Assembly: GCF_035594765.1 (NCBI RefSeq)
Contig: NW_026943818.1
Span: 2,523,757 to 2,587,756 of the forward strand
Direction of reading: 5' to 3'
DNA length: 64,000 nucleotides
Source: Anolis carolinensis
Taxonomy: Eukaryota
In this document: piece after piece, positions 4,349 to 64,000 of the stretch
Position numbering within the stretch: position 1 is the first letter of the stretch
Layout: every line of letters starts with the position of its first letter
Translations under genes and position numbers: made by a program
Notes under the pieces: model-generated
Seen by the model: the letters and a program-made list of their open reading frames with translations, nothing else
Told to the model about the DNA's origin: nothing
Database searches by the model: none

Positions 4349-4485
4349 GTGTTGAAGTTGTAAAGACATTGTAGAAACTTCCCATATTTAGAACATGCAA
4401 ATATAGATAGATAGATAGAACAGCGAAAGGCACTTTGAAGAGAAAAGAAAGAAATTATGACTTTGGTTTTGTATTGCTATAAAAC

Positions 4486-4619
4486 CAGGCCTGGGCCAAC
4501 TTCGGCCCTCCGGGTGTTTTGGACTTCAACTCCCACAATTCCTAACAGCCTACCGGCTGTTAGGAATTGTGGGAGTTGAAGTCCAAAACACCCGGAGGGC
4601 CGAAGTTGGCCCAGGCCTG
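4486..4619. mobile_element. Palindromic hAT-type MITE (perfect 65-bp arms)
   Basis: 4486-4550 is the exact reverse complement of 4555-4619. Partial copies at about 43428-43497, 50030-50082 and 61598-61684. Confidence 0.85.
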
Positions 4620-4729
4620 CTGTAAACACAAATCAACTCCCTTCCATTTATCATCCTTCATTATTTCCCTTTTTAAAAATTGCTGGCAGCGTCTTCCCAA
4701 ATGTTGGAGTCTCGCTGTAAATCCTTCAT

Positions 4730-5129
4730 TCAAGCTTCTTTTAGTAGCGCGTCTGCTTTGGTTTCGTCCAGGAGGAAAGGTGACCGGAGCTCTTTGGATT
4801 TCAAGCATTTTTCCAGGCCCTGAAGGAAGACAAATCATTTCCATAATGCGTCAGTCATGACCAGTTAATGGAAAAAGCTCTATCTAGATCAAGGGTGTCA
4901 AATAGGTATATATACACACATACATGTATACATATATACAATACTAGCTGTGCCCGGCCACGCGTTGCTGTGGCTTTTTTTTAGTGATGTTGGTCAATCT
5001 ACATTGGGTTTTATTTTTGTTGTGACCGTCAACAAAAATTATACAGTATTATTTATTCATTTATTACATTAAAGACATATGATAGGATATTACGCTATAA
5101 CATATACGACTATTTCACAATATTAGTAG

Positions 5130-5179
<50 letters not shown>

Positions 5180-7598
5180 TTGTTTTGTTATTAGTATTAT
5201 ATTGTAGTGTATTATAATATTATTAGCAGTATTATATGTATATACAATGTATTGTATTATATATGTATTGTATTATTATATATATTAATATATTGCAAAT
5301 TGGCCCCAGAATACGGAATGGCCTTGTAGTTTCAAAGCTTGGGTGGTTCCGTGTGTTAGAGGGGGGGAATGCTTTGTTGGGAGGTGCTAGGTGGTCCTGA
5401 TTGTTTCCTGGATGGAATTTGTGTGTTTTCAGACTGTTGTTGTTTATTTACTGTGCTGAGATGAGAGAGTGATGAGTACGGAATGGCCTTGTAGGTTCAA
5501 AGTGTGGGTGGTTTCCTGTGTGAAGGTGGGAATCCTTTGGTGGGAGGTGTTAGATGGCCCTGATTGTTTCCTGGATGGAATAGCTGTGTTTTTAGAGTGT
5601 TGATCTTTATTTACTGTCCTGAGATGATATTGTTGTGTATTATTGTACCACAGTAATTATTTCATATTACAGTAGAATCTCACCCAACATTCGTTTATGC
5701 AATGTTCTGGATTATGCAATGGAGTCTGCCTTTTAATAGTCAATGTTTTTGGAGTGAGTGTTTTTAATGTATTGTGATATTTTGGTGGTAAATTTGCAAA
5801 TACAGTAATTACTACATAGCATTACTGCGCATGGAACTACTTTTTGTGTCAAATTTGTTGTATAACATGATGTTTTGGTGTTTAATTTGTATAATGATGA
5901 CCTAATTCGATGTGTAATTGGTTTTCCTGAATCCCTTCTTATTATCCAACATATTTATTTATGCAACGTTCTGCCGGCTTGTTTATGTTGGATAAGTGAG
6001 ATTCTAGTGTATATTTATAATGTGATATTATTTGTTTAGAAGTGGATTATATGAGGCGCCTTCTGTTATAACAATAATAATTATTATAGTCTTGAATGAT
6101 TATCATTGTGATAAAAATAATAACTACTTATTATTAGTTGTTATTATATTGTTGAATGATTATCAATGTTATAATAATAATTATTAATTTGTGAATGATT
6201 ATTACTATAATAATAATAATAATTTTCTATTATTACGATTTGTTAATACATTGTTGAATGATTGTCAGTGTTATAATAATAAGAACTGACTATTATTATG
6301 AATTATTATGTTCTCGAATGATTATCAGTATTATACTAATAATAAATTAGTATTATTATTGGTGATTATTACATTCTTAACTGATGATCAGTTATTATAT
6401 TAATAATTATTACAGGGAAGGGAAAGGTGAGGGCGATAGGGTTTGAGAGGGGAAAAAGGGGGGCTTCTGAGGCATTGGAGGGGTTGTAATTTGTGGGTGA
6501 GAACAACAACAACAATAACAACAACAGAAAAGGGGGAAGCTCAGCCTGGGCCAACTTGGGCCTTCCCTTGACTTGTTTTGGGCGCCAACTTCCACCCTTC
6601 CTGGCCTGAGGCTCTTTCCTTTTCCCCATCATCCGTTTAACCGGGTGAGGGGGAAAAGGAAGGGCCCTGAGGCCGGGAAGGGCGGGGGTTGGCGCCCCAA
6701 ACAACTCGAGGGGAGGTCCAGGCCTGCTCGAGGGCCGTGCCCTCCTCTTCCCCCCTCACCTTGAAGAGCTTGAAGACCTCCGAGAAGAACCGAGAAGGGA
6801 GGAGGAGGAGAGAGGGTGAGGCGGGGGGGGCTCCGCGGGGCCTTCCTCGCATTGGGGGGAGGGGAGAGGGGCGGGAGGAGGGGGCCTGAACGGCAACCGG
6901 GGCCCTCCATGGGCCCTGAGGGGGGAGGACATTGAGGGGGAGAGGGCAGAGAGCGACGTGAGGCCCGCACGCCTCCCAGCGCGGCCTCCTCCATCCCGCG
7001 CCCAGCAAGGAATCGGCCTTCCTGCCTTCCTTCCTTCAGCTCTGAGGCGAGGTGTGTGTGTGCGCGCGCGGGAAGGGATGGGGGGGTGCGCGCAGGCGCA
7101 CATCGCCTGTTGCAGTTTTTGGCCGTTTGTGGCCCTGTGATTGTGTTTGTCATATAAATCTTACTGGAGCCGCGCGAGCGCCATAAAGGTTTGAAGCATG
7201 GTGTTTTTGCGCATGCGTACTTAGTTTTGGCATTTTTTGGTGTTGTGATAGTGTTTTATGTGTAAATTTGTTGTATCTTACTGGAGGCGGGGATGATGGA
7301 TTGCGTTGCCAATTTTCGAGTTTGGGGGGGCTGTAGATTTGTTGTTTTGTCCATCGCCGTGATGCCATCACTCTTTTATATATATAGATAATTTACAATA
7401 ATATATAATATTATAACATATTGTATATGCATATAATATTAATATTATTTTGAAAAACAGTACTGTATAATGCTAACAATACAATATAATAATATTAATT
7501 ATATATTCTATAGTACATGTAATATTACAATATATTGATATAGTACAATATAGTAATTTATTGCCAGTATTGTGCTATGCTAATAATATATTATTGTA

Positions 7599-7653
<55 letters not shown>

Positions 7654-10600
7654 TTTATTTTTATACCCCACCCCATCTCCCTGAAGGGACTCAGGGTGGC
7701 TTACATGGGGCATAGCCCAATAAAACAATCAAATATCAATGATACAACAATAAAACAATTATACCAATAAAACCTCAATTATCAGTAAAACAATCAATAA
7801 AATCGACATGAAGCATACAATATTAAAACAGGAGACTAATCAATAAAACCCAGTACAGAATGTGCCAGAATGGGAAAGGTATTTCACGGTTGAAATGGAC
7901 AATAAAGTGCAAAATAACTTTGGCAACACCTCAAGAATGGGGCTATTATAATCTGTCCATATAATATATTGTACATGCATATAATATTATTATTTTGTAA
8001 AACAATATAATGCTAATAATACAATATAATAATATTAATTATATATTACATAGTACATGTAATATTACTAATAATATTACAATATATTGATATAGTACAA
8101 TATAGTAATTTATTGCCAGTATTGTACTATGCTAATAATATATTATTGTATGTAAACTTAATTTGTAAGCCGCTTTGAGTCCCCTTCGGTGTGAGATATT
8201 AATAATATTATTTTGTAATACAATATAATGCTAATAATACAATATAATAATATTAATTATATATTACATAGTACATGTAATATTACTAATAACATTACAA
8301 TATATTGATATAGTACAATATAGTAATTTATTGCCAGTATTGTACTATGCTAATAATATATTATTGTATGTAAACTTAATTTGTAAGCCGCTTTGAGTCC
8401 CCTTCGGTGTGAGATATTAATAATATTATTTTGTAATACAATATAATGCTAATAATACAATATAATAATATTAATTATATATTACATAGTACATGTAATA
8501 TTACTAATAATATTACAATATATTGATATAGTACAATATAGTAATTTACTGCCAGTATTGTACTATGCTAATAATATATTATTGTATGTAAACTTAATTT
8601 GTAAGCCGCTTTGAGTCCCCTTCGGTGTGAGATATTAATAATATTATTTTGTAATACAATATAATGCTAATAATACAATATAATAATATTAATTATATAT
8701 TACGTAGTACATGTAATATTACTAATAACATTACAATATATTGATATAGTACAATATAGTAATTTATTGCCAGTATTGTACTATGCTAATAATATATTAT
8801 TGTATGTAAACTTAATTTGTAAGCCGCTCTGAGTCCCCTTCGGTGTGAGATATTAATAATATTATTTTGTAATACAATATAATGCTAATAATACAATATA
8901 ATAATATTAATTATATATTACATAGTACATGTAATATTACTAATAATATTACAATAGATTGATATAGTACAATATAGTAATTTATTGCCAGTATTATGCT
9001 AATAACATATTATTTTATGTAAATTTAATTTGTAAGTCGCTCTGAGTCCCCTTTGGGGTGAGAAGGGCAGGATATAAATGTATTAAATAAATAAATAAAA
9101 TAAATTTCCACAGAGGACCAAACATAATTTATTTTTTTCCATACTAGTCGGTGCTCAAATTTTGATCTAATTTGGATACCCAAATGTTATTGAATAGCAA
9201 CTCCTTGAATAGCAGAATGGGCCGAGACTCACCTCTCCAAAATAAGAGACCAGTGGCGAAATCTCACAAATAGCCGGCGGTTCTTCATCCTCTGTCAAAC
9301 TAGAAAAAAGAAAGATGCATTTAGTCCCTTTCAGCAGCCATTATCTGTGTACAGGCTGCACCAGAGCATGTGCAGAGTGTTTTCCCTCCCTAATCATTAC
9401 TACCTGAGCTGAAAGGAACCCTGGAACAATGGAGGCTATATTACTCATATTATTTTTAAATATTTTTGGTTCCTACTGTTTTGTTTACAATGCTACTTTT
9501 TGGATCAAGCTTTAGAACTTGGTGACTGCATTTATTTATTTATGTATTTATTTACATCACTTTTGCCCCGCCCTTCTCATCTAAAGAGACTCAGGGCGGC
9601 TTACAAGAGTCTTTTTTAAAAACAGTTTATTTCCATAATATTCAAAAATATAATGATATTTTAATACAGATTTTAAATGGGTATTTCTTAAAAGACAAAA
9701 ACATAAATATGCATATATTTTAAAGTCACTTTGAACTTTAAAAAAATGAAATGCAGAAAACTGATAACTCAACAGCCAATCTTAAAGAGTAGATCCCTGG
9801 AATCGGTACTTCATTGCCGATTTACCATTCAAATATTGACTGGAGCAGTCTGCAGAGCATGTGCAAAGTGTTTGAATGAATAGGCCCGGTAGAGTTGTCA
9901 TCAGAATAATTCTTTTATGTTTATAAAACTGTACGGCACTTTATTGCTGTTACTTATTTCCATGATATAGCAATTTATGAAACCTGTCCCCGCTGGTTTG
10001 CTTTTAATTACTCTGATTTTATCTGCTTGGATTTTAATGTATTGTTCATTACAGTACAGTCTCACTTATCCAACGTTCTGGATTATCCAACGCATTTTTG
10101 TAGTCAATGTTTTCAATGCATTGTGATATTTTGGTGCTAAATTCGTAAATACAGTAATTACTACACAGCATTACTGCGTATTGAACTACTTTTTCTGTCA
10201 AATTTGTTGTATAACATGATGTTTTGGTGCTTAATTTGTAAAATCATCACCTAATTTGATGTTTAATAGGCTTTTCCTTAATCCCTCCTTATTATCCAAC
10301 ATATTCGCTTATCCAACGTTCTGCCGGCCCGTTTATGTTGGATAAGTGAGACTCTATATATTATTTTGTTTATTGTTGAAATGTTTTCAGTTTTTGTCAA
10401 ATATGTTGTCGTTGTTGGGCTTGTTCCTATTGTGAGCCACCCCAAGTCCCTTTGGAGAGATGGGGCGGGATATAAAAATAAAGTTTATTATTACAGTAGA
10501 GTCTCACTTATCCAACATAAACGGGCCGGCAGAACGTTGGATAAACGAATATGTTGGATAATAAGGAGTGATTAAGGAAAAGCCCATTAAACATCAAATT

Positions 10601-20630: not shown

Positions 20631-23600
20631 GTGCCTTTAAGTCATGTCAGACTTTGGCTGAGCCTAAGTCTAAAATTATTTATTTACTGCGTTTATTTAT
20701 TACATTTATATCCCACCCTTCTCACCCCGAAGGGGACTCAGAGCAGCTGTATGTACATACAGTATATTGTATTATTAGCATAACACAATATTAGCATTAT
20801 ATATTACTGTATTGAACTATACCACTATACTATTATATAATATGTAATATATAACATATAATTAATATTATTATATAGTATTACTATTAGTATTATATTG
20901 TATAACATAAGATTATTATCAATATTATATGTATATACAATATATTATATTATTAAAACTGATATAAAAATATTATATTATAAAACTGAGGATGGGGGCC
21001 AGGTAAATGACCTTGGAGGGCCGCATCCGGCCCCCGGGCCTTAGTTTGGGGACCCCTGCAATATATCATTAGCATAGCATAATATAAGCATGAAATTACT
21101 ATATTGTACTATATCATTGTATGGTAATATTATTAGTAATATTACATTTAATCTATAATATATTATTAATAATATTATATAATAATATATTATTATTAGT
21201 ATAATATTGTATTTATTACATTTATATCCCGCTCTTCTCACCCCGAAGGGGACTCAGAGCGGCGTACAAATCCAATGTACATACAATATATTATTAGCAT
21301 AGTACAATGTAAGCATTAAATTACTATATTGTACTATATCATTATATGGTAATATTATTAGTACAGTAGAGTCTCACTTATCCAACACTCACTTATACAA
21401 CGGTCTGGATTATCCAACGCATTTTTGTAGTCAGCGTTTTCAATTCATCATGATATTTTGGTGCTAAATTCGTAAATACAGTAATTACTACATAGCATTA
21501 CTGCGTATTGAACTACTTCTTCTGTCAAATTTATTGTATAACATGATGTTTTGGTGCTTAATTTGTAAAATCATAACCTAATTTGATGTTTAATAGGCGT
21601 TTCCTTAATCTCTCCTTATTATCCAACATATTCGCTTATCCAACGTTCTGTTGGCCCGTTTAGCTTGGATAAGTGAGACTCTACTGTATATTGTACTATA
21701 TCATTATATGGTAATATTATTAGTAATATTACATTTAATATATAATATATTATTAATATTATTATATTGTATTATTAGTAGTATAATGTATTCCATTGTA
21801 ATATTATTATCAATATTATATGTATATTTTATTTATTTATTTACTACATTTATAGTCAATGTTTTCAATATATCGTGATATTTTGGTGCTAAATTTTGGT
21901 GCTCCTCACTGAGGTTCTCATTGCTCCTTGGATGTGGGTGGACTACAACTCCCATCGTCCAGGGTCAATTCCCCTCTGACCCCACCAATATTTTAGGATG
22001 TTCATGATGGGACTGTGTGCCAAGTTTGGTCCAGACCTATCATTGGTGGGATTCCTTGTGCTGTTTGATTATGGGTGTACTACAACTCCCATCATTCTGA
22101 ATCAATCCACACACCCCCAACCCACCAGTATTCAAAGTTCACCATGTCAGCTAGGTGTGCCCGGTTTGGTCCAGGTCCATCATCATTGAGGTTCACATTG
22201 CTCTATGGATGTGGGTGGACTACAACTCCCATCGTCCAGGGTCAATTCCCCTCACAAAGTGAGCAAGGCCTAAAGGGGGTGGGGCCTACCCTTCTGACTG
22301 GCAGCCAGGGAAGAACGGCTCTTCCTCGTCCTCTGTAATTTATTTTTATAGGGTTTTTTTTATTGAAAGGCATAGATTGGATGACTATGTCTTTTGTGGC
22401 CAGATTTGTTGTGATTTGGTTCAGTGGTTTTGTTGTTTACATTTGCACATTACATGTTGCACATTACATTTTTATATATACAGTAGAGTCTCACTAATCC
22501 AAGCCTCGCTTATCCAAGCCTCTGGATAATCCAAGCCATTTTGTAGTCAATGTTTTCAATACATCATGATATTTTGGTGCTAAATTCGTAAATACAGTAA
22601 TTACAACATAACATTACTGCGTATTGAACTACTTTTTCTGTCAAATTTGTTGTATAACATGAAGTTTTGGTGCTTAATTTGTAAAATCATAACCTAATTT
22701 GATGTTTAATAGGCTTTTCCTTAATCCCTCCTTATTATCCAAGTTATTCGCTTATCCAAGCTTCTGCCGGCCCGTTTATGTTGGATAAGTGAGACTCTAG
22801 TGTAGATACTAGCTGTGCCCAGCCACGCGTTGCTGTGGCGAAGTCTGGTGTTCTGGGAAATAAAGTATTGAGGAATTGGTGGTAGTTAAGGTAAAGGGTA
22901 AAGGTTTTCCCCTGACATTAAGTCCAGTCGTGTCTGACTCTTGGGGTTGGTGCTCATCTTGAGTCTACACTGCCATATAATCCAGTTGAAATCAGATAAT
23001 CTGTAGTTTATAGGCAGTGTGGAAGAGGCCTAACTATGCCTGTCCCCTAGGCTGAGCAGGTTGCTAAGAGACCAAGTGGGTGGAGCTTAGCCTTCTAACT
23101 GGCAGCAATTGGATACAAACAATTATTCCTCTCCCTCTAATCAGGACTTAATTTTTCTTTTCCTTTTGTTGTATGAACGTAAAGGCATGGATGAGGGGTT
23201 TTGCTACCAAGTTTAGTGTTTCTGGGATGTGTAGTTTTGTTGTTTTGTCCTAGGCTGAAATTTCATTACCCTTTTTATATATATATGTTTGTATGTACAG
23301 TAGAGTCTCACTTATCCAACACTCGCTTATCCAACGTTCTGGATTATCCAATGCATTTTTGTAGTCAATGTTTTCAATACATCGTGATATTTTGGTGCCA
23401 AGTTTGTAAATACAGTAATTCCTACATAGCATTACTGTGTATTGAACTAGTTTTTCTGCCAAATTTATTGTACAACATGATGTTTTGGTGCTTAATTTGT
23501 AAAATCATAACCTCATTTGATGTTTAATAGGCTTTTCCTTAATCCCTCCTTACTATCCAACATATTCACTTATCCAACGTTCTGCCGACCCGTTTATGTT

Positions 23601-43107: not shown

Positions 43108-43531
43108 GACTTCAGATAACCTGTCTTTGCTAACCTGTATGTTGATTTGCCAGTTCGATTTACCTGTTTGGTGTGGGAGGGGTTATAGACATGTGATTAT
43201 ACTGAGCATGTTCAGACACAAGACTCCCTTTTGTATTCTGTCTGCTTTACACCTCAGTGGAGGTGGATGCATGTTACCGTTAGGACTTCAGATAAGCGCC
43301 CAGAGACTGGGCGCAGTTATTTCCAATGCCTTCCCATTTTAGTGGATTCTGGGCTTCCTTAGAAGGAGATGGGAACAGAGCTTCTCTTTGGGAGGTCGAA
43401 AAACCTTTCCTTTCCTTCTTTCCTCCCTACCGGTTGTTAGGAATTGTGGGAGTTGGGGTCCAAAACACCTGGAGGGCCGAAGTTGGCCCATGCCTGCTCT
43501 GTATGGTCCCTGTGGCTTATACTATATTATT

Positions 43532-61767: not shown

Positions 61768-62243
61768 CTAGCTGTGCCCGGCCACGCGTTGCTGTGGCAA
61801 AGTGGTGGTGGTATTGGTTAAAAATTGTTGTGTAATTTTTATTTGACGTTATTTGTATTTTTTAAATTAATTTTATTGTAACTTATCTTTTCATTTATTA
61901 TATTTTATTATTTTCTTGTATTATTTTTAGTTATTTTCAGTTATTATAGTATTTTATTGTATTAATTTTTTAGTGATTTTAATTATTTTTTAGTGTTTTT
62001 TATTATTTTTTATTGGGTTGCTAGGAGACCAAGTTGGAGGAGTTTAGCCTTCTAACTGGCAGCAATTGGATAAAAGCAATTATTCCTCTCTCTCTAATTA
62101 GGGCTTTATTTTTCTTTTCTTTTTGTTGTATCAACCTAGAGCCGTGGATGTTGGTTTGTGTTGTCAAATTTCGAGGTTGGGGGGCCTGTAGTTTTGTTGT
62201 TTTGTGGGTCACCGTTATGCCATCACTCTTTTATATATATAGA
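61768..62243 (-). mobile_element. Non-autonomous Helitron in ANAPC2 intron 1
   Basis: Both termini present. Same subtype as 1385-1849 and 57051-57503. Confidence 0.85.
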
Positions 62244-62732
62244 TTATTGTGTTGTATTTTAATATATAGGTTATGTACTATAGTGTTATATATAGTGAGA
62301 TAGCTTTATACCTTTCTCTCTCTCTATATATATATATATACTATTTATTTACTACATTTATATCCCACCCTTCTCACCCCAAAGGGGACTAAGAGAGGCT
62401 TACAAACTAAATTTACATACAATATTATATTATTAGCATAGCACAATACTGGCAATAAATTACCGTATTGTACTATATCAATATATTGTAATATTATTAG
62501 TAATATAACATGTAATATATAATAGGTAAGGGTAAAGGTGCTCATCTCCATTTCTAAGCCAAAGAGCCGGCGTTGTCTGTAGACACCTCCAAGGTCATGT
62601 GGCCACTGGCATGACTGCATGGAGCGCCATTACCTTCCCGCCGGAGCGGTACCTATTGATCTACTCACATTGGCATGTTTTCGAACTGCTAGGTTGGCAG
62701 GAGCTGGGGCTGACAGCTCAGTGCATATATCT

Positions 62733-64000
62733 TCTATATATATAAAAGAGTGATGGCATCACGGCGATTCACAAAACAACAAAAGTACAGGCCCCCCAAC
62801 CTCAAAATTTGACAACACAACCCATCATCCACGCCTCAAGGTTGATACAACAAAAAGAAAAGAAAAATAAAGTCCTAATTAGAGGGAGAGCAATAATTTT
62901 TTTTATCCAATTGCTGCCAGTTTAGAGGGCTAATCTCTGCCCACTTGGTTGCCTAGCAACCAAGGGACAGCCAGGTTTCAGTTAGGGGACAGGGTTAGGG
63001 TTAGGGTTTAGATTTAGGCCTCACTTAGACTTCTTCCACAGATTATCTAATTTGCACTGGATTATATGGCAGTGTAGACTCAGCTATATAACCCATTTAT
63101 AATCTTATATTATCTGCTTTGCACTGGATTATCTCCACACTACCATATAATCCACTTCAGTGTGCATTTTATACAGCTGTGAAGAAGGAGCCTCATATAA
63201 TCCAGTTCTGAGCAGATAATATAATATTAGAAATATACAGTAGAGTCTCACTTATCCAACGTAAACAGGCCGGCAGGATAAGTGAATATGTTGGATAATA
63301 AGAAGGGATTCAGGAAAAGCCAATTAAACATCAAATTAGGTAATCGTTATACAAATTAAGCACCAAAACGTCATATTATACAACAAATTTGACAGAAAAA
63401 GTAGTTCCTTGCGCAGTAATGCTATGTAGTATTTACAGTAGAGTCTCACTTATCCAACACTCGCTTATCCAACGTTCTGGATTATTCAACGCATCTTTGT
63501 AGTCAATGCTTTCAATATATCGTGATATTTTGGTGCTAAATTCATAAATACAGTAATTACTATATAGCATTACTGTGTACTGACCTACTTTTTCTGACAA
63601 ATTTGTTGTCTAACATGATGTTTTGGTGCTTAATTTGTAAAATCATAACTTAATTTGATGTTTAATAGGGTTATCCTTAATTCCTCATTATCCAACATAT
63701 TCGCTTATCCAACGTTCTGCCGGCCCGTTTATGTTGGATAAGTGAGACTCTACTGTACTGTATTTACAAATTTACCACTAAAATATCACAATGAATTTAA
63801 AACACTGACTACAAAAACATTGATTATGAAAAGGCAGACTGCGTTGGATAATCCAGAACATTGTATAAGCGAATGATGGATAAGTGAGATTCTTCTTTAA
63901 TATGAAATAATTACTGGGATAGAATAATGCAGAACAATATAATCTCTAAAACCAGGACAGGAAATAAACAGGGGAATTCCACACAGGAAACAATCAGGGC
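62733..64000 (+). mobile_element. Non-autonomous Helitron running off the window, close paralog of 53666-55669
   Basis: 5' terminus and near-colinear internal sequence. Confidence 0.85.

What the first reader, a model, noticed from the sequence alone, without database searches (positions are those of the whole stretch)
4944..7388. Helitron carrying a CpG-island promoter/exon-like cassette inside UAP1L1 intron 8
Seen: canonical Helitron ends (A|TC...hairpin-CTAG|T, no TSD) enclose about 700 nt (6540-7230) of CpG-rich sequence that none of the other 13 copies has. It includes NRF1-like GCGCATGCG (about 7209) and GCGCAGGCGCA (about 7090), a pyrimidine-rich exon-like tract and a strong donor AAG|GTGAGG at 6760/6759. 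The donor is on the same strand as UAP1L1 and MAN1B1. An ATG at 6852 gives 31 codons ([31 protein letters not shown]) ending in phase 0, the phase required by both UAP1L1 exon 9 and MAN1B1 exon 2. Known: Helitrons capture host promoters and exons in maize and vespertilionid bats. Inference: this is a lizard case of promoter/first-exon capture that could act as an internal promoter giving chimeric transcripts. I cannot name the donor gene.
Basis: partly seen in the sequence, partly recalled or inferred. Interest (0 to 1): 0.8.

Follow-up and report, generated by a model that had tools for sequence, protein, structure and literature searches.

The report
Lizard Helitron carrying a gene-start-like fragment
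A 2.4-kb rolling-circle transposon (Helitron) in the last intron of a lizard UAP1-type gene carries about 0.5 kb of CpG-rich DNA that looks like the decayed promoter, first exon and splice donor of some host gene; this is a known kind of event, and I found no evidence that it works as a promoter.

Summary
Window 4944-7388 (minus strand) is a real non-autonomous Helitron: 5' TC, 3' hairpin plus CTAG, inserted A|T, one of 14 copies in the window. It alone carries GC-rich DNA at 6540-7264.

- About 530 nt (6734-7264) looks like a gene 5' end. It has a near-consensus donor at 6760, expected 0.004-0.04 times by chance.
- 190 nt of the "island" is a nested fold-back repeat.
- The two NRF1-like motifs are copies of each other. 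They lie in a 117-bp tandem duplication that starts inside the Helitron backbone.
- All three sense frames are open, so the 31-codon ORF and its phase carry no weight.
- CpG o/e (0.62) barely exceeds the window average (0.57).

No protein, Pfam or PDB search named a donor gene. The exon end FFSEVFK|gt resembles the TESK1/2-type cargo that this scan reported before in other Helitrons of the same genome. I could not verify that link.

The interior of this copy also shows the strand-specific G loss noted before by this scan (16/43 G versus 1/39 C lost in a nested MITE). That would blur any donor signal.

Promoter activity therefore remains untested.

The parts
4944..7388 (-). Non-autonomous Helitron copy X (2,445 bp), sense to the host gene
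   Evidence: Termini, A|T insertion and family membership.
7265..7388 (-). 5' terminal backbone (LTS) shared with all copies. Similarity to the family ends at about position 124.
   Evidence: Alignment of 13 copies. The first 35 nt are identical to the subfamily majority.
7089..7289 (-). Two units of a ~117-bp tandem duplication (7289-7173 and 7172-7089). The first 25 nt of the unit are Helitron backbone.
   Evidence: Local alignment of X:100-181 with X:217-300. Short direct repeat D3.
7209..7217 (.). GCGCATGCG, NRF1-like palindromic motif, in duplication unit 1
   Evidence: One match in the window, 0.12 expected.
7090..7100 (.). GCGCAGGCGCA, the diverged copy of the same motif in duplication unit 2
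   Evidence: It aligns with the motif at 7209-7217.
6760..7088 (-). GC-rich exon-like segment (70% GC; top strand C 44%, G 25%). Kozak-type ATG at 6994-6992 (frame 0). ATG at 6852-6850 (frame 1). Ends [10 protein letters not shown]|gt.
   Evidence: No Pfam, PDB or protein hit in any frame.
6760..6777 (-). 9-bp tandem duplication GTCTTCAAG/CTCTTCAAG just before the donor. Without it the exon end reads FFSEVFK|gt.
   Evidence: Read directly from the sequence.
6751..6762 (-). Splice-donor-like site AAG|GTGAGG (exon side ends at 6760)
   Evidence: Score 7.28 against 7.5 for the true exon-8 donor. Chance expectation 0.004-0.04.
6544..6733 (.). Nested or co-captured fold-back repeat (arms 6557-6638 and 6639-6720, 80% complementary, no spacer)
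   Evidence: Its arm is 81% identical over 64 nt to the fold-back at 4469-4636, and there is a half copy at 43439-43493. Rfam gives only sub-threshold hairpin hits.
6413..6543 (-). Segment that is pyrimidine-rich on the Helitron top strand, with a (GTT)n run at 6502-6526. Origin unknown.
6065..6412 (.). AT-rich tandem repeats (periods 39-102 nt), unique to this copy
6025..6064 (-). Point where the family backbone resumes (shared with copies A, I and L)
5651..6020 (.). Nested TIR MITE (TIRs 5668-5683 and 5996-6011), about 18 copies in the window. In X it has lost 16 of 43 top-strand G.
5312..5627 (-). 163-bp unit, 1.9 copies, shared with long copy I
4944..4974 (-). 3' terminus: hairpin GCCAC..GTGGC, then CGGGCACAG-CTAG. 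It is 100% identical to most copies.
4730..4819 (-). Last coding exon of the host UAP1-type gene (acceptor at 4819, stop at 4732-4730)
   Evidence: Read. The frame continues from exon 8.
9233..9299 (-). Preceding host exon (donor GAG|GTGAGT at 9233, phase 0)

Best explanation
Copy X is a fixed or common non-autonomous Helitron. About 310 nt of its family backbone (position ~125 to ~436) have been replaced by ~1.2 kb of foreign DNA.

The distal ~530 nt of that cargo (6734-7264) is most likely a decayed DNA copy of a host gene's 5' end. It would comprise CpG-island promoter or 5'UTR, a first coding exon of about 76 codons, the splice donor and the first 27 nt of intron 1. A fold-back repeat interrupts it or was co-captured with it.

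I infer that the cargo was picked up while the element's lineage was still mobile. The likely route is transposase read-through, or template switching, from a 5' Helitron stub through host DNA to the 3' part of another Helitron. That composite then transposed into this intron.

The interior then or earlier suffered strand-specific loss of G (G>A, G>C, plus A>C) on the Helitron top strand. This has erased any protein-level trace of the donor gene and made the exon-like tract pyrimidine-rich.

The donor may be the TESK1/2-type first exon that other Helitrons of this genome are reported to carry. The exon end FFSEVFK|gt fits my recollection of TESK1/2 (from memory, not checked against a sequence). 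This is unverified.

The cassette is most likely an inert passenger today. Promoter or first-exon use is possible but untested.

Shown: Helitron identity, uniqueness of the cargo, donor strength, nested repeats, motif duplication, G-loss footprint.
Inferred: host-gene origin, time of capture, lack of function.
For: Helitron identity and single-element structure:
- Canonical ends and 13 relatives.
- The interior at 6064-5317 is collinear with copies I and L, so the cargo lies inside one element.

Gene-5'-end appearance:
- 64-70% GC, with CpG o/e 0.67-0.82 in 6760-7250.
- ATG in Kozak context at 6994, about 78 codons upstream of the donor.
- Donor score equal to the real host donor and rare by chance.

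Mobility of the mutated lineage:
- The termini are unmutated (first 35 and last 31 nt equal the majority).
- The 5' backbone (first ~124 nt as a whole) is 12% diverged and the nested MITE 11%.
- This fits a mutated lineage that still had to transpose.

G loss on the top strand:
- MITE: 16/43 G lost against 1/39 C, p=7.7e-5.
- X against I: G lost 40 against gained 17; C gained 48 against lost 12.
- Cargo GC skew -0.28, like the rest of the element.

Presence in the species and precedent:
- The locus is held by 20 runs of one organism from 8 studies.
- Bat Helitrons preferentially carry promoter, 5'UTR, exon 1 and intron 1 fragments (PMC4224331; NUBPL case in PMC2997563).
- The read-through capture model is in PMC4778049.
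- Scan notes s1-517346, s1-517391 and s1-558062 report TESK-like exon-end cassettes in other Helitrons of this genome. These are leads only.
Against: - No donor locus was seen, because no lizard genome could be searched.
- No protein relative was found: the 92-aa frame against 1.84 billion representatives gave only a spurious repeat protein; the word search gave nothing; Pfam gave no hits and PDB none with E below 0.05.
- The best PDB hit (ITPKA N-terminal peptide, E=0.052) points to a different gene and is probably chance.
- The TESK link rests on 7 residues recalled from memory.
- The first ~175 nt after the backbone, with both NRF1-like motifs, is A/C-rich like Helitron backbone and is duplicated together with backbone. 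It may not be host promoter.
- CpG o/e is close to the window mean.
- The Kozak ATG is out of frame with the exon end.
Confidence: 0.58

Rival explanations
1. The cassette is a working internal promoter and first exon. Transcription starts in it and splices from the donor at 6760 to the last UAP1-type exon (acceptor 4819), or on into the downstream gene, giving chimeric transcripts.
For: - Sense orientation and a donor as strong as the host's own.
- Phase 0 matches the phase-0 acceptor.
- One intact NRF1-type motif about 350 nt upstream of the ATG.
- CpG o/e of 0.82 is retained in 6901-7250 despite top-strand G loss, which could mean germline hypomethylation.
- Captured promoters in bat Helitrons correspond to active promoters in human (PMC4224331).
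Against: - No RNA evidence.
- The product would be a 31+29-residue peptide with no relatives.
- The ORF is not special.
- The cargo is hypermutated.
- The window-wide CpG o/e is already 0.57.
Confidence: 0.1
2. The GC-rich segment is not host-gene DNA. It is ordinary transposon sequence: the 5' region of an autonomous Helitron, or a piece of another element such as a LINE 5'UTR or an LTR. The donor and ATG would be that element's own, or chance.
For: - Novick et al. report that all anole non-autonomous Helitron families are deletion derivatives of autonomous ones, and that capture of extraneous DNA is rare (PMC3014272).
- The sequence next to the backbone is backbone-like in composition and duplicated with it.
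- 190 nt of the segment is demonstrably a repeat.
- No host protein match was found.
Against: - Eleven of the 12 comparable copies continue with a different, shared backbone after position 124 (copy H also diverges there, with its own GC-rich cargo), so X is a rare departure from the shared backbone.
- No RepHel or other TE protein similarity in any frame.
- No second copy in a window that holds 14 Helitrons and many other repeats.
- The G and CpG content is far above the rest of the element.
Confidence: 0.2
3. The cargo never travelled. It entered the resident Helitron after insertion, as filler DNA at a repaired break or by gene conversion. Alternatively, 4944 and 7388 are ends of two different truncated Helitrons around native intron DNA.
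For: - The cargo is unique in the window.
- Helitrons here cluster and abut one another, so chance juxtaposition of ends is conceivable.
Against: - The interior downstream of the cargo is collinear with copies I and L up to the 3' end.
- The nested MITE and shared segments carry the Helitron-top-strand G loss. Thirteen MITE copies outside Helitrons, including two in the same gene's introns, do not show X's extreme (16/43 G against 1/39 C); the largest skews among them are 7/39 against 3/43 and 8/36 against 4/43.
- The termini are spared.
- Other Helitrons in the genome are reported with similar cassettes.
Confidence: 0.07

Closest known systems
HelibatN3 carrying the NUBPL promoter, 5'UTR, exon 1 and partial intron 1 in Myotis lucifugus (Pritham & Feschotte 2007, as cited in PMC2997563 and PMC4224331)
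   Same: A non-autonomous Helitron whose cargo looks like a CpG-rich gene start with first exon, donor and a stub of intron 1. The cargo is in the same orientation as the element.
   Different: For NUBPL the parental single-copy gene is known and the cargo is amplified more than 1,000-fold. Here the parent gene is unidentified, the copy number is unknown, and the cargo is heavily mutated and interrupted by a fold-back repeat.
Bat Helitron 'protogenes' and Helitron-supplied promoters or exons (Thomas et al. 2014, PMC4224331)
   Same: Preference for 5' gene ends, intronic sense insertions that could donate promoters or splice sites, and nested TEs inside the cargo.
   Different: The bat cases were backed by cross-species homology and transcript data. 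Neither is available here.
Anole Helitron families Helitron-1/2_AC and 2N1-2N5 (Novick et al. 2011, PMC3014272)
   Same: Lizard host, non-autonomous elements of 0.5-2 kb, TA target, composite structure with other TEs reported for Helitron-2N3.
   Different: That survey reports only Poseidon and SINE fragments as cargo and calls capture rare. A gene-start-like cassette is not described.
Helraiser read-through ('end bypass') transduction (Grabundzija et al. 2016, PMC4778049)
   Same: It explains a composite of a 5' terminus, foreign DNA and a 3' hairpin terminator. The 5' end and the hairpin are the parts that must stay intact, as they do in X.
   Different: Read-through adds DNA beyond the 3' end. 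In X the cargo sits 124 nt from the 5' end, so a second Helitron's 3' part or an internal replacement has to be assumed.

Membership tests
Helitron (eukaryotic rolling-circle transposon) | 5' end TC and 3' end CTRR | tested here: met
   TCTATATA... at 7388 and ...CTAG at 4944 on the minus strand.
Helitron (eukaryotic rolling-circle transposon) | Short GC-rich hairpin about 10 nt upstream of the 3' end | tested here: met
   GCCAC-agcaacgc-GTGGC, followed by CGGGCACAG and CTAG. It is identical in most copies.
Helitron (eukaryotic rolling-circle transposon) | Insertion between A and T without a target-site duplication | tested here: met
   Flanks are ...aatta| and |tattg. Twelve of 13 copies show the same pattern or abut another Helitron.
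Helitron (eukaryotic rolling-circle transposon) | Multiple dispersed copies sharing both termini | tested here: met
   14 copies or fragments in 64 kb.
Helitron (eukaryotic rolling-circle transposon) | RepHel protein (autonomous elements only) | tested here: not met
   No long ORF and no Pfam hit on the cargo ORFs, the only part of X scanned. X is non-autonomous, which does not exclude membership.
Helitron gene capture of a promoter and first exon (NUBPL/HelibatN3 type) | Cargo homologous to a non-TE parental gene locus elsewhere in the genome or in other species | not testable with these tools
   No squamate genome search was available. Protein-level searches of all sense frames found nothing.
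Helitron gene capture of a promoter and first exon (NUBPL/HelibatN3 type) | Cargo contains exon features: start codon, open frame, donor, intron stub | tested here: inconclusive
   The donor is clearly non-random. The open frames are uninformative at 70% GC. The Kozak ATG at 6994 is out of frame with the exon end.
Helitron gene capture of a promoter and first exon (NUBPL/HelibatN3 type) | Same cargo in several transposed copies (it travelled with the element) | not tested
   Not present in the other 13 window copies. Only unverified scan notes point to similar cassettes elsewhere. Spared termini and Helitron-strand G loss are indirect support.
CpG island (Gardiner-Garden type: >200 nt, GC >50%, o/e >0.6) | Composition thresholds | tested here: met
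   6540-7230: GC 64%, o/e 0.62. 6901-7250: GC 60%, o/e 0.82. But the whole window has o/e 0.57 and 21 such segments (20 besides this one), so the criterion discriminates poorly here.
TESK1/TESK2 first coding exon | Protein similarity to the TESK N-terminus and glycine-loop region ending at the exon 1 donor | tested here: inconclusive
   Only FFSEVFK|gt resembles the TESK loop, and that is recalled from memory. The big HMMER search returned no kinase. No TESK sequence could be obtained from a tool for a direct comparison.
Fold-back (palindromic) MITE-like repeat | Two long, near-complementary arms, with related copies elsewhere | tested here: met
   82-nt arms, 80% complementary. The arm is 81% identical to the 4469-4636 fold-back, whose own 82-nt arms are 90% complementary. 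Target-site duplication was not resolved.

The most novel reading that the evidence does not exclude
The cargo of this Helitron, including the gene-start cassette, records a transposition-linked mutational process that acts on one strand only. It shows loss of G (to A or C) and gain of C on the Helitron top strand, while the termini needed for mobility are spared. That would be a molecular footprint of the single-stranded or rolling-circle stage of Helitron transposition in a vertebrate. An earlier follow-up in this scan (s1-517356) found no paper describing it. If so, captured promoters and exons are scrambled as they are amplified, which limits their use as raw material for new genes.
Probability: 0.3. 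Interest if true: 0.7.

Novelty: new member of a known kind. Interest (0 to 1): 0.35.

Why it matters
Helitron capture of gene starts is well documented in maize and vesper bats, but not in squamates. The published anole survey calls capture of extraneous DNA rare.

A confirmed lizard case would extend the phenomenon to another vertebrate lineage. That holds especially if it belongs to an amplified family of gene-start cassettes, as other notes of this scan suggest. It would also offer candidate alternative promoters inside genes.

On present evidence this copy is a decayed passenger of unknown parentage. Its main value is as one more data point for two genome-wide questions:
- How often do anole Helitrons carry gene 5' ends?
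- What causes the strand-specific G loss in their cargo?

Tried and rejected
1. Pfam on four sense-strand and two antisense translations of the cassette: no family.
2. PDB by sequence:
   - The only hit below E=0.1 in the FFSEVFK frame is a 43-aa ITPKA N-terminal peptide (E=0.052, 14/32 identities in a low-complexity stretch).
   - The match runs past the donor into intron-side residues.
   - I treat it as chance.
   - The other frames gave nothing meaningful.
3. Word-index protein search of the 132-aa frame: 223 candidates, none with E<=1.
4. Full HMMER search of the 92-aa exon-limited frame against 1.84 billion representatives: one hit, a repetitive 805-aa protein with 10 short stretches, which is spurious.
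5. Exact-ORF look-ups of the three longest sense ORFs in public assemblies: not on record.
6. Rfam:
   - There are 21 matches with E<=1, all to microRNA-precursor families and all far below gathering scores.
   - All but two lie entirely within the fold-back 6544-6733; those two (6734-6822 and 6638-6766) extend into the exon-like segment.
   - It is not a known RNA.
7. RNA test of the donor:
   - The look-up of sequencing runs listed no certain RNA run.
8. APOBEC-type TpC context for the G loss: weak in the MITE (9/16 against 6/27, p=0.045) and absent in the X-I comparison (p=0.8). Not claimed.
9. Literature:
   - No paper holds both 'Helitron' and 'TESK1'.
   - No paper holds the peptide FFSEVYK.
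10. Scan-notes search by sequence: blank.Full report
**Observation**

Window 4944-7388 read on the minus strand begins a|TCTATATATATAAAAGAGTG. It ends GCCACAGCAACGCGTGGCCGGGCACAGCTAG|t. That gives 5' TC, a subterminal hairpin, 3' CTAG and insertion between A and T with no duplication.

A self-comparison of the window finds the 5' 122 nt thirteen more times at 71-89% identity. It finds the 3' 31 nt eleven more times at 97-100%. Paired ends define copies of 329-2,004 bp, one more cut by the window end, and a partial 5' end at 6-113.

None of them holds anything like 6540-7264.

**Host context**

Minus-strand exons at 16.7-17.1, 14.4-15.1 and 12.9-13.2 kb hit Pfam UDPGP in collinear order.
- Exon 9233-9299 reads ...[11 protein letters not shown]|gtgagt.
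- The last coding exon is 4819-4730, with acceptor cttccttcag|G and a stop at 4732-4730.
- Together they bound a 4.4-kb phase-0 intron that contains the element in sense orientation.

I did not verify that the gene is UAP1L1 rather than UAP1. I also did not verify the intron number, or anything about MAN1B1.

**Anatomy of copy X**

Positions below are on the Helitron strand; window coordinate = 7389 minus position.
- **1-124:** family backbone. Eleven of the 12 other aligned copies continue with a shared backbone to about position 230, but X departs at ~124. So does copy H (52425-53559), which has a different GC-rich piece at the same place.
- **100-216 and 217-300:** two units of a 117-bp tandem duplication whose first 25 nt are backbone. 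GCGCATGCG (7209-7217) and GCGCAGGCGCA (7090-7100) occupy the same position in the two units. They lie in A/C-rich sequence that was already joined to the backbone when it duplicated.
- **~300-630 (7088-6760):** 70% GC, ending in AAG|GTGAGG.
- **Next 26 nt (6759-6734):** G-rich.
- **6733-6544:** a fold-back with 82-nt arms and no spacer. Its arm is 81% identical over 64 nt to the arms of another fold-back at 4469-4636, and a half copy lies at 43439-43493. It is a repeat family member, not a feature of a host intron.
- **6543-6413:** pyrimidine-rich on the top strand.
- **6412-6065:** AT-rich tandem repeats.
- **From 6064 on:** backbone and cargo shared with copies A, I and L resume. They include a TIR MITE (5651-6020, about 18 copies in the window) and a 163-bp duplicated unit, down to the 3' terminus.

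This collinearity shows that X is one element with replaced interior. It is not two Helitron stubs around native intron DNA.

**Is the cassette more than chance?**

The donor is. With a standard donor weight matrix it scores 7.28. The true exon-8 donor scores 7.5, and the next best of 160 sense-strand GT sites in the scanned interval (4945-9240) scores 3.57. Composition-preserving block shuffles give 0.03-0.04 such sites per Helitron or intron and 0.004 per cassette.

The ORF is not. All three sense frames are open for 115-174 codons in this GC-rich stretch, and a phase-0 ending has a one-in-three prior.

A better start is the ATG at 6994 in the context CGCGGGATGG. It lies 235 nt upstream of the donor but in another frame.

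A 9-bp tandem duplication (GTCTTCAAG/CTCTTCAAG) precedes the donor. Without it the exon end reads FFSEVFK|gt.

The CpG criterion is met (GC 64%, o/e 0.62; 6901-7250 has o/e 0.82). But the whole window has o/e 0.57 and 21 segments pass the same lenient thresholds (20 besides this one). "CpG island" is therefore weak evidence here.

**Who is the donor gene?**

I could not tell.
- Pfam had no hits and PDB none with E below 0.05 in any frame.
- The word-index protein search found nothing.
- A full HMMER scan of the 92-aa exon-limited frame against 1.84 billion representatives gave one spurious repeat protein.
- Three exact-ORF look-ups found nothing.
- The only sub-0.1 hit in the FFSEVFK frame is an ITPKA N-terminal peptide (E=0.052). 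It is low-complexity and runs across the donor, so I regard it as chance.

Earlier notes of this scan report Helitrons elsewhere in the same genome with a "TESK1/TESK2-like exon end and splice donor". They are s1-517391 (711 letters) and s1-558062 (801 letters). One follow-up, s1-517346, concluded that a 3.1-kb Helitron carries a decayed TESK1 first coding exon and intron stub.

FFSEVFK|gt fits my recollection of the TESK glycine-loop at the end of exon 1. A first coding exon of about 76 codons also fits. Both points rest on memory and on unverified notes, and I had no TESK sequence from a tool to compare with. I put the same-cargo reading at roughly even odds.

**A reason why the parent is unrecognisable**

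The TIR MITE nested in X can be polarised against the majority of 18 window copies.
- It is 10.9% diverged, against 2-7% for the 13 copies outside Helitrons.
- On the Helitron top strand it has lost 16 of 43 G (10 G>A, 6 G>C) but only 1 of 39 C (Fisher p=7.7e-5).
- The copies outside Helitrons, including two in other introns of the same gene, show no comparable asymmetry; the largest skews among them are 7/39 G against 3/43 C and 8/36 against 4/43.

In the segment shared with copy I, X lacks 40 G that I has, against 17 the other way. X has 48 C that I lacks, against 12 the other way. The main classes are G>A 17, G>C 16 and A>C 21.

All 13 Helitron copies have a G-poor, A-rich top strand (mean GC skew -0.21, AT skew +0.18). 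The rest of the window is at -0.02 and -0.04. The exon-like cargo has GC skew -0.28.

This is the footprint another follow-up of this scan described on other DNA (s1-517356). It also explains the one-sided G-U bias noted for the fold-back (s1-528558): 11 of 16 arm mismatches can be read as top-strand G loss.

A TpC context was weak in the MITE (p=0.045) and absent in the X-I comparison (p=0.8). I make no APOBEC claim.

Two consequences follow for this finding.
- The "pyrimidine-rich exon-like tract" is at least partly a mutational product.
- Because G loss destroys CpG, the captured DNA was probably a stronger CpG island than it is now.

The first 35 and last 31 nt of X are unchanged, while the 5' backbone as a whole (first ~124 nt) is 12% and the nested MITE 11% diverged. 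This suggests the changes arose in a lineage that still had to transpose. By that reading the cargo travelled with the element. This is an inference.

**Mechanism**

The best reading is a composite formed by read-through or template switching. A 124-nt 5' stub was joined to host DNA and then to the 3' part of another Helitron, as in the Helraiser model. In that model the 5' end is essential and the 3' hairpin is the terminator (PMC4778049). The composite then transposed into this intron.

The preference of Helitrons for gene 5' ends is documented in bats (PMC4224331), with NUBPL in HelibatN3 as the classic case (cited in PMC2997563). For anoles, the published survey lists only Poseidon and SINE fragments as Helitron cargo and calls capture rare (PMC3014272). 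I found no paper linking Helitrons with TESK1.

**Function**

Nothing here shows promoter activity.
- Twenty runs of one organism from eight studies hold the stretch, so it is common or fixed. None is certainly RNA.
- I worked beside those places afterwards and sent none of their letters to any search tool.
- If used, the splice would give a 31+29-residue peptide without relatives.

I rate an active internal promoter at about 0.1.

**Verdict**

It is a new member of a known kind. The scan has already met similar cassettes and the same G-loss footprint elsewhere in this genome.

Noticed in passing
window 5746-6015 (MITE inside Helitron X), compared with 17 other MITE copies in the window: Strand-specific hypermutation. 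On the Helitron top strand 16/43 G are lost (G>A 10, G>C 6) against 1/39 C (p=7.7e-5). Thirteen copies outside Helitrons show no such extreme bias. The X-I comparison adds A>C and overall C gain. The termini of X are spared.
   Followed up: partly
all 13 Helitron copies (e.g. 846-1849, 22809-23285, 52425-56154, 57051-58934, 61768-64000): Every copy has a G-poor, A-rich top strand (GC skew -0.04 to -0.32, AT skew +0.08 to +0.40). The rest of the window is near zero.
   Followed up: partly
window 52425-53559 (copy H): A second Helitron leaves the family backbone at the same position (~125) as X. There it carries a different GC-rich piece of about 160 nt, followed by a MITE. This may mark a hotspot for cargo acquisition at an A-rich tract.
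   Followed up: no
window 1384/1385 and 55669/55670: Exact head-to-tail junctions (CTAG|TCTATA and CTAG|TATATA) between Helitrons of two different 5' subfamilies.
   Followed up: no
window 53666-55200 and 62733-64000: Copies I and L are nearly identical over more than 1.2 kb, including two overlapping inverted MITE copies. This suggests a recent local segmental duplication rather than two insertions.
   Followed up: no
window 4469-4636: A fold-back repeat (82-nt arms, 90% complementary, 4-nt spacer) lies about 100 nt downstream of the host gene's stop codon. It is the closest relative in the window of the fold-back inside the cargo.
   Followed up: partly
window 22539-22807 and 23296-23625: Two full copies of the TIR MITE, in the same orientation, directly flank Helitron C (22809-23285).
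   Followed up: no
window 7400-9000: The intron upstream of the Helitron is about 80% AT and contains a periodic repeat recurring roughly every 200-440 bp (hits near 8084, 8314, 8520, 8700, 8956).
   Followed up: no
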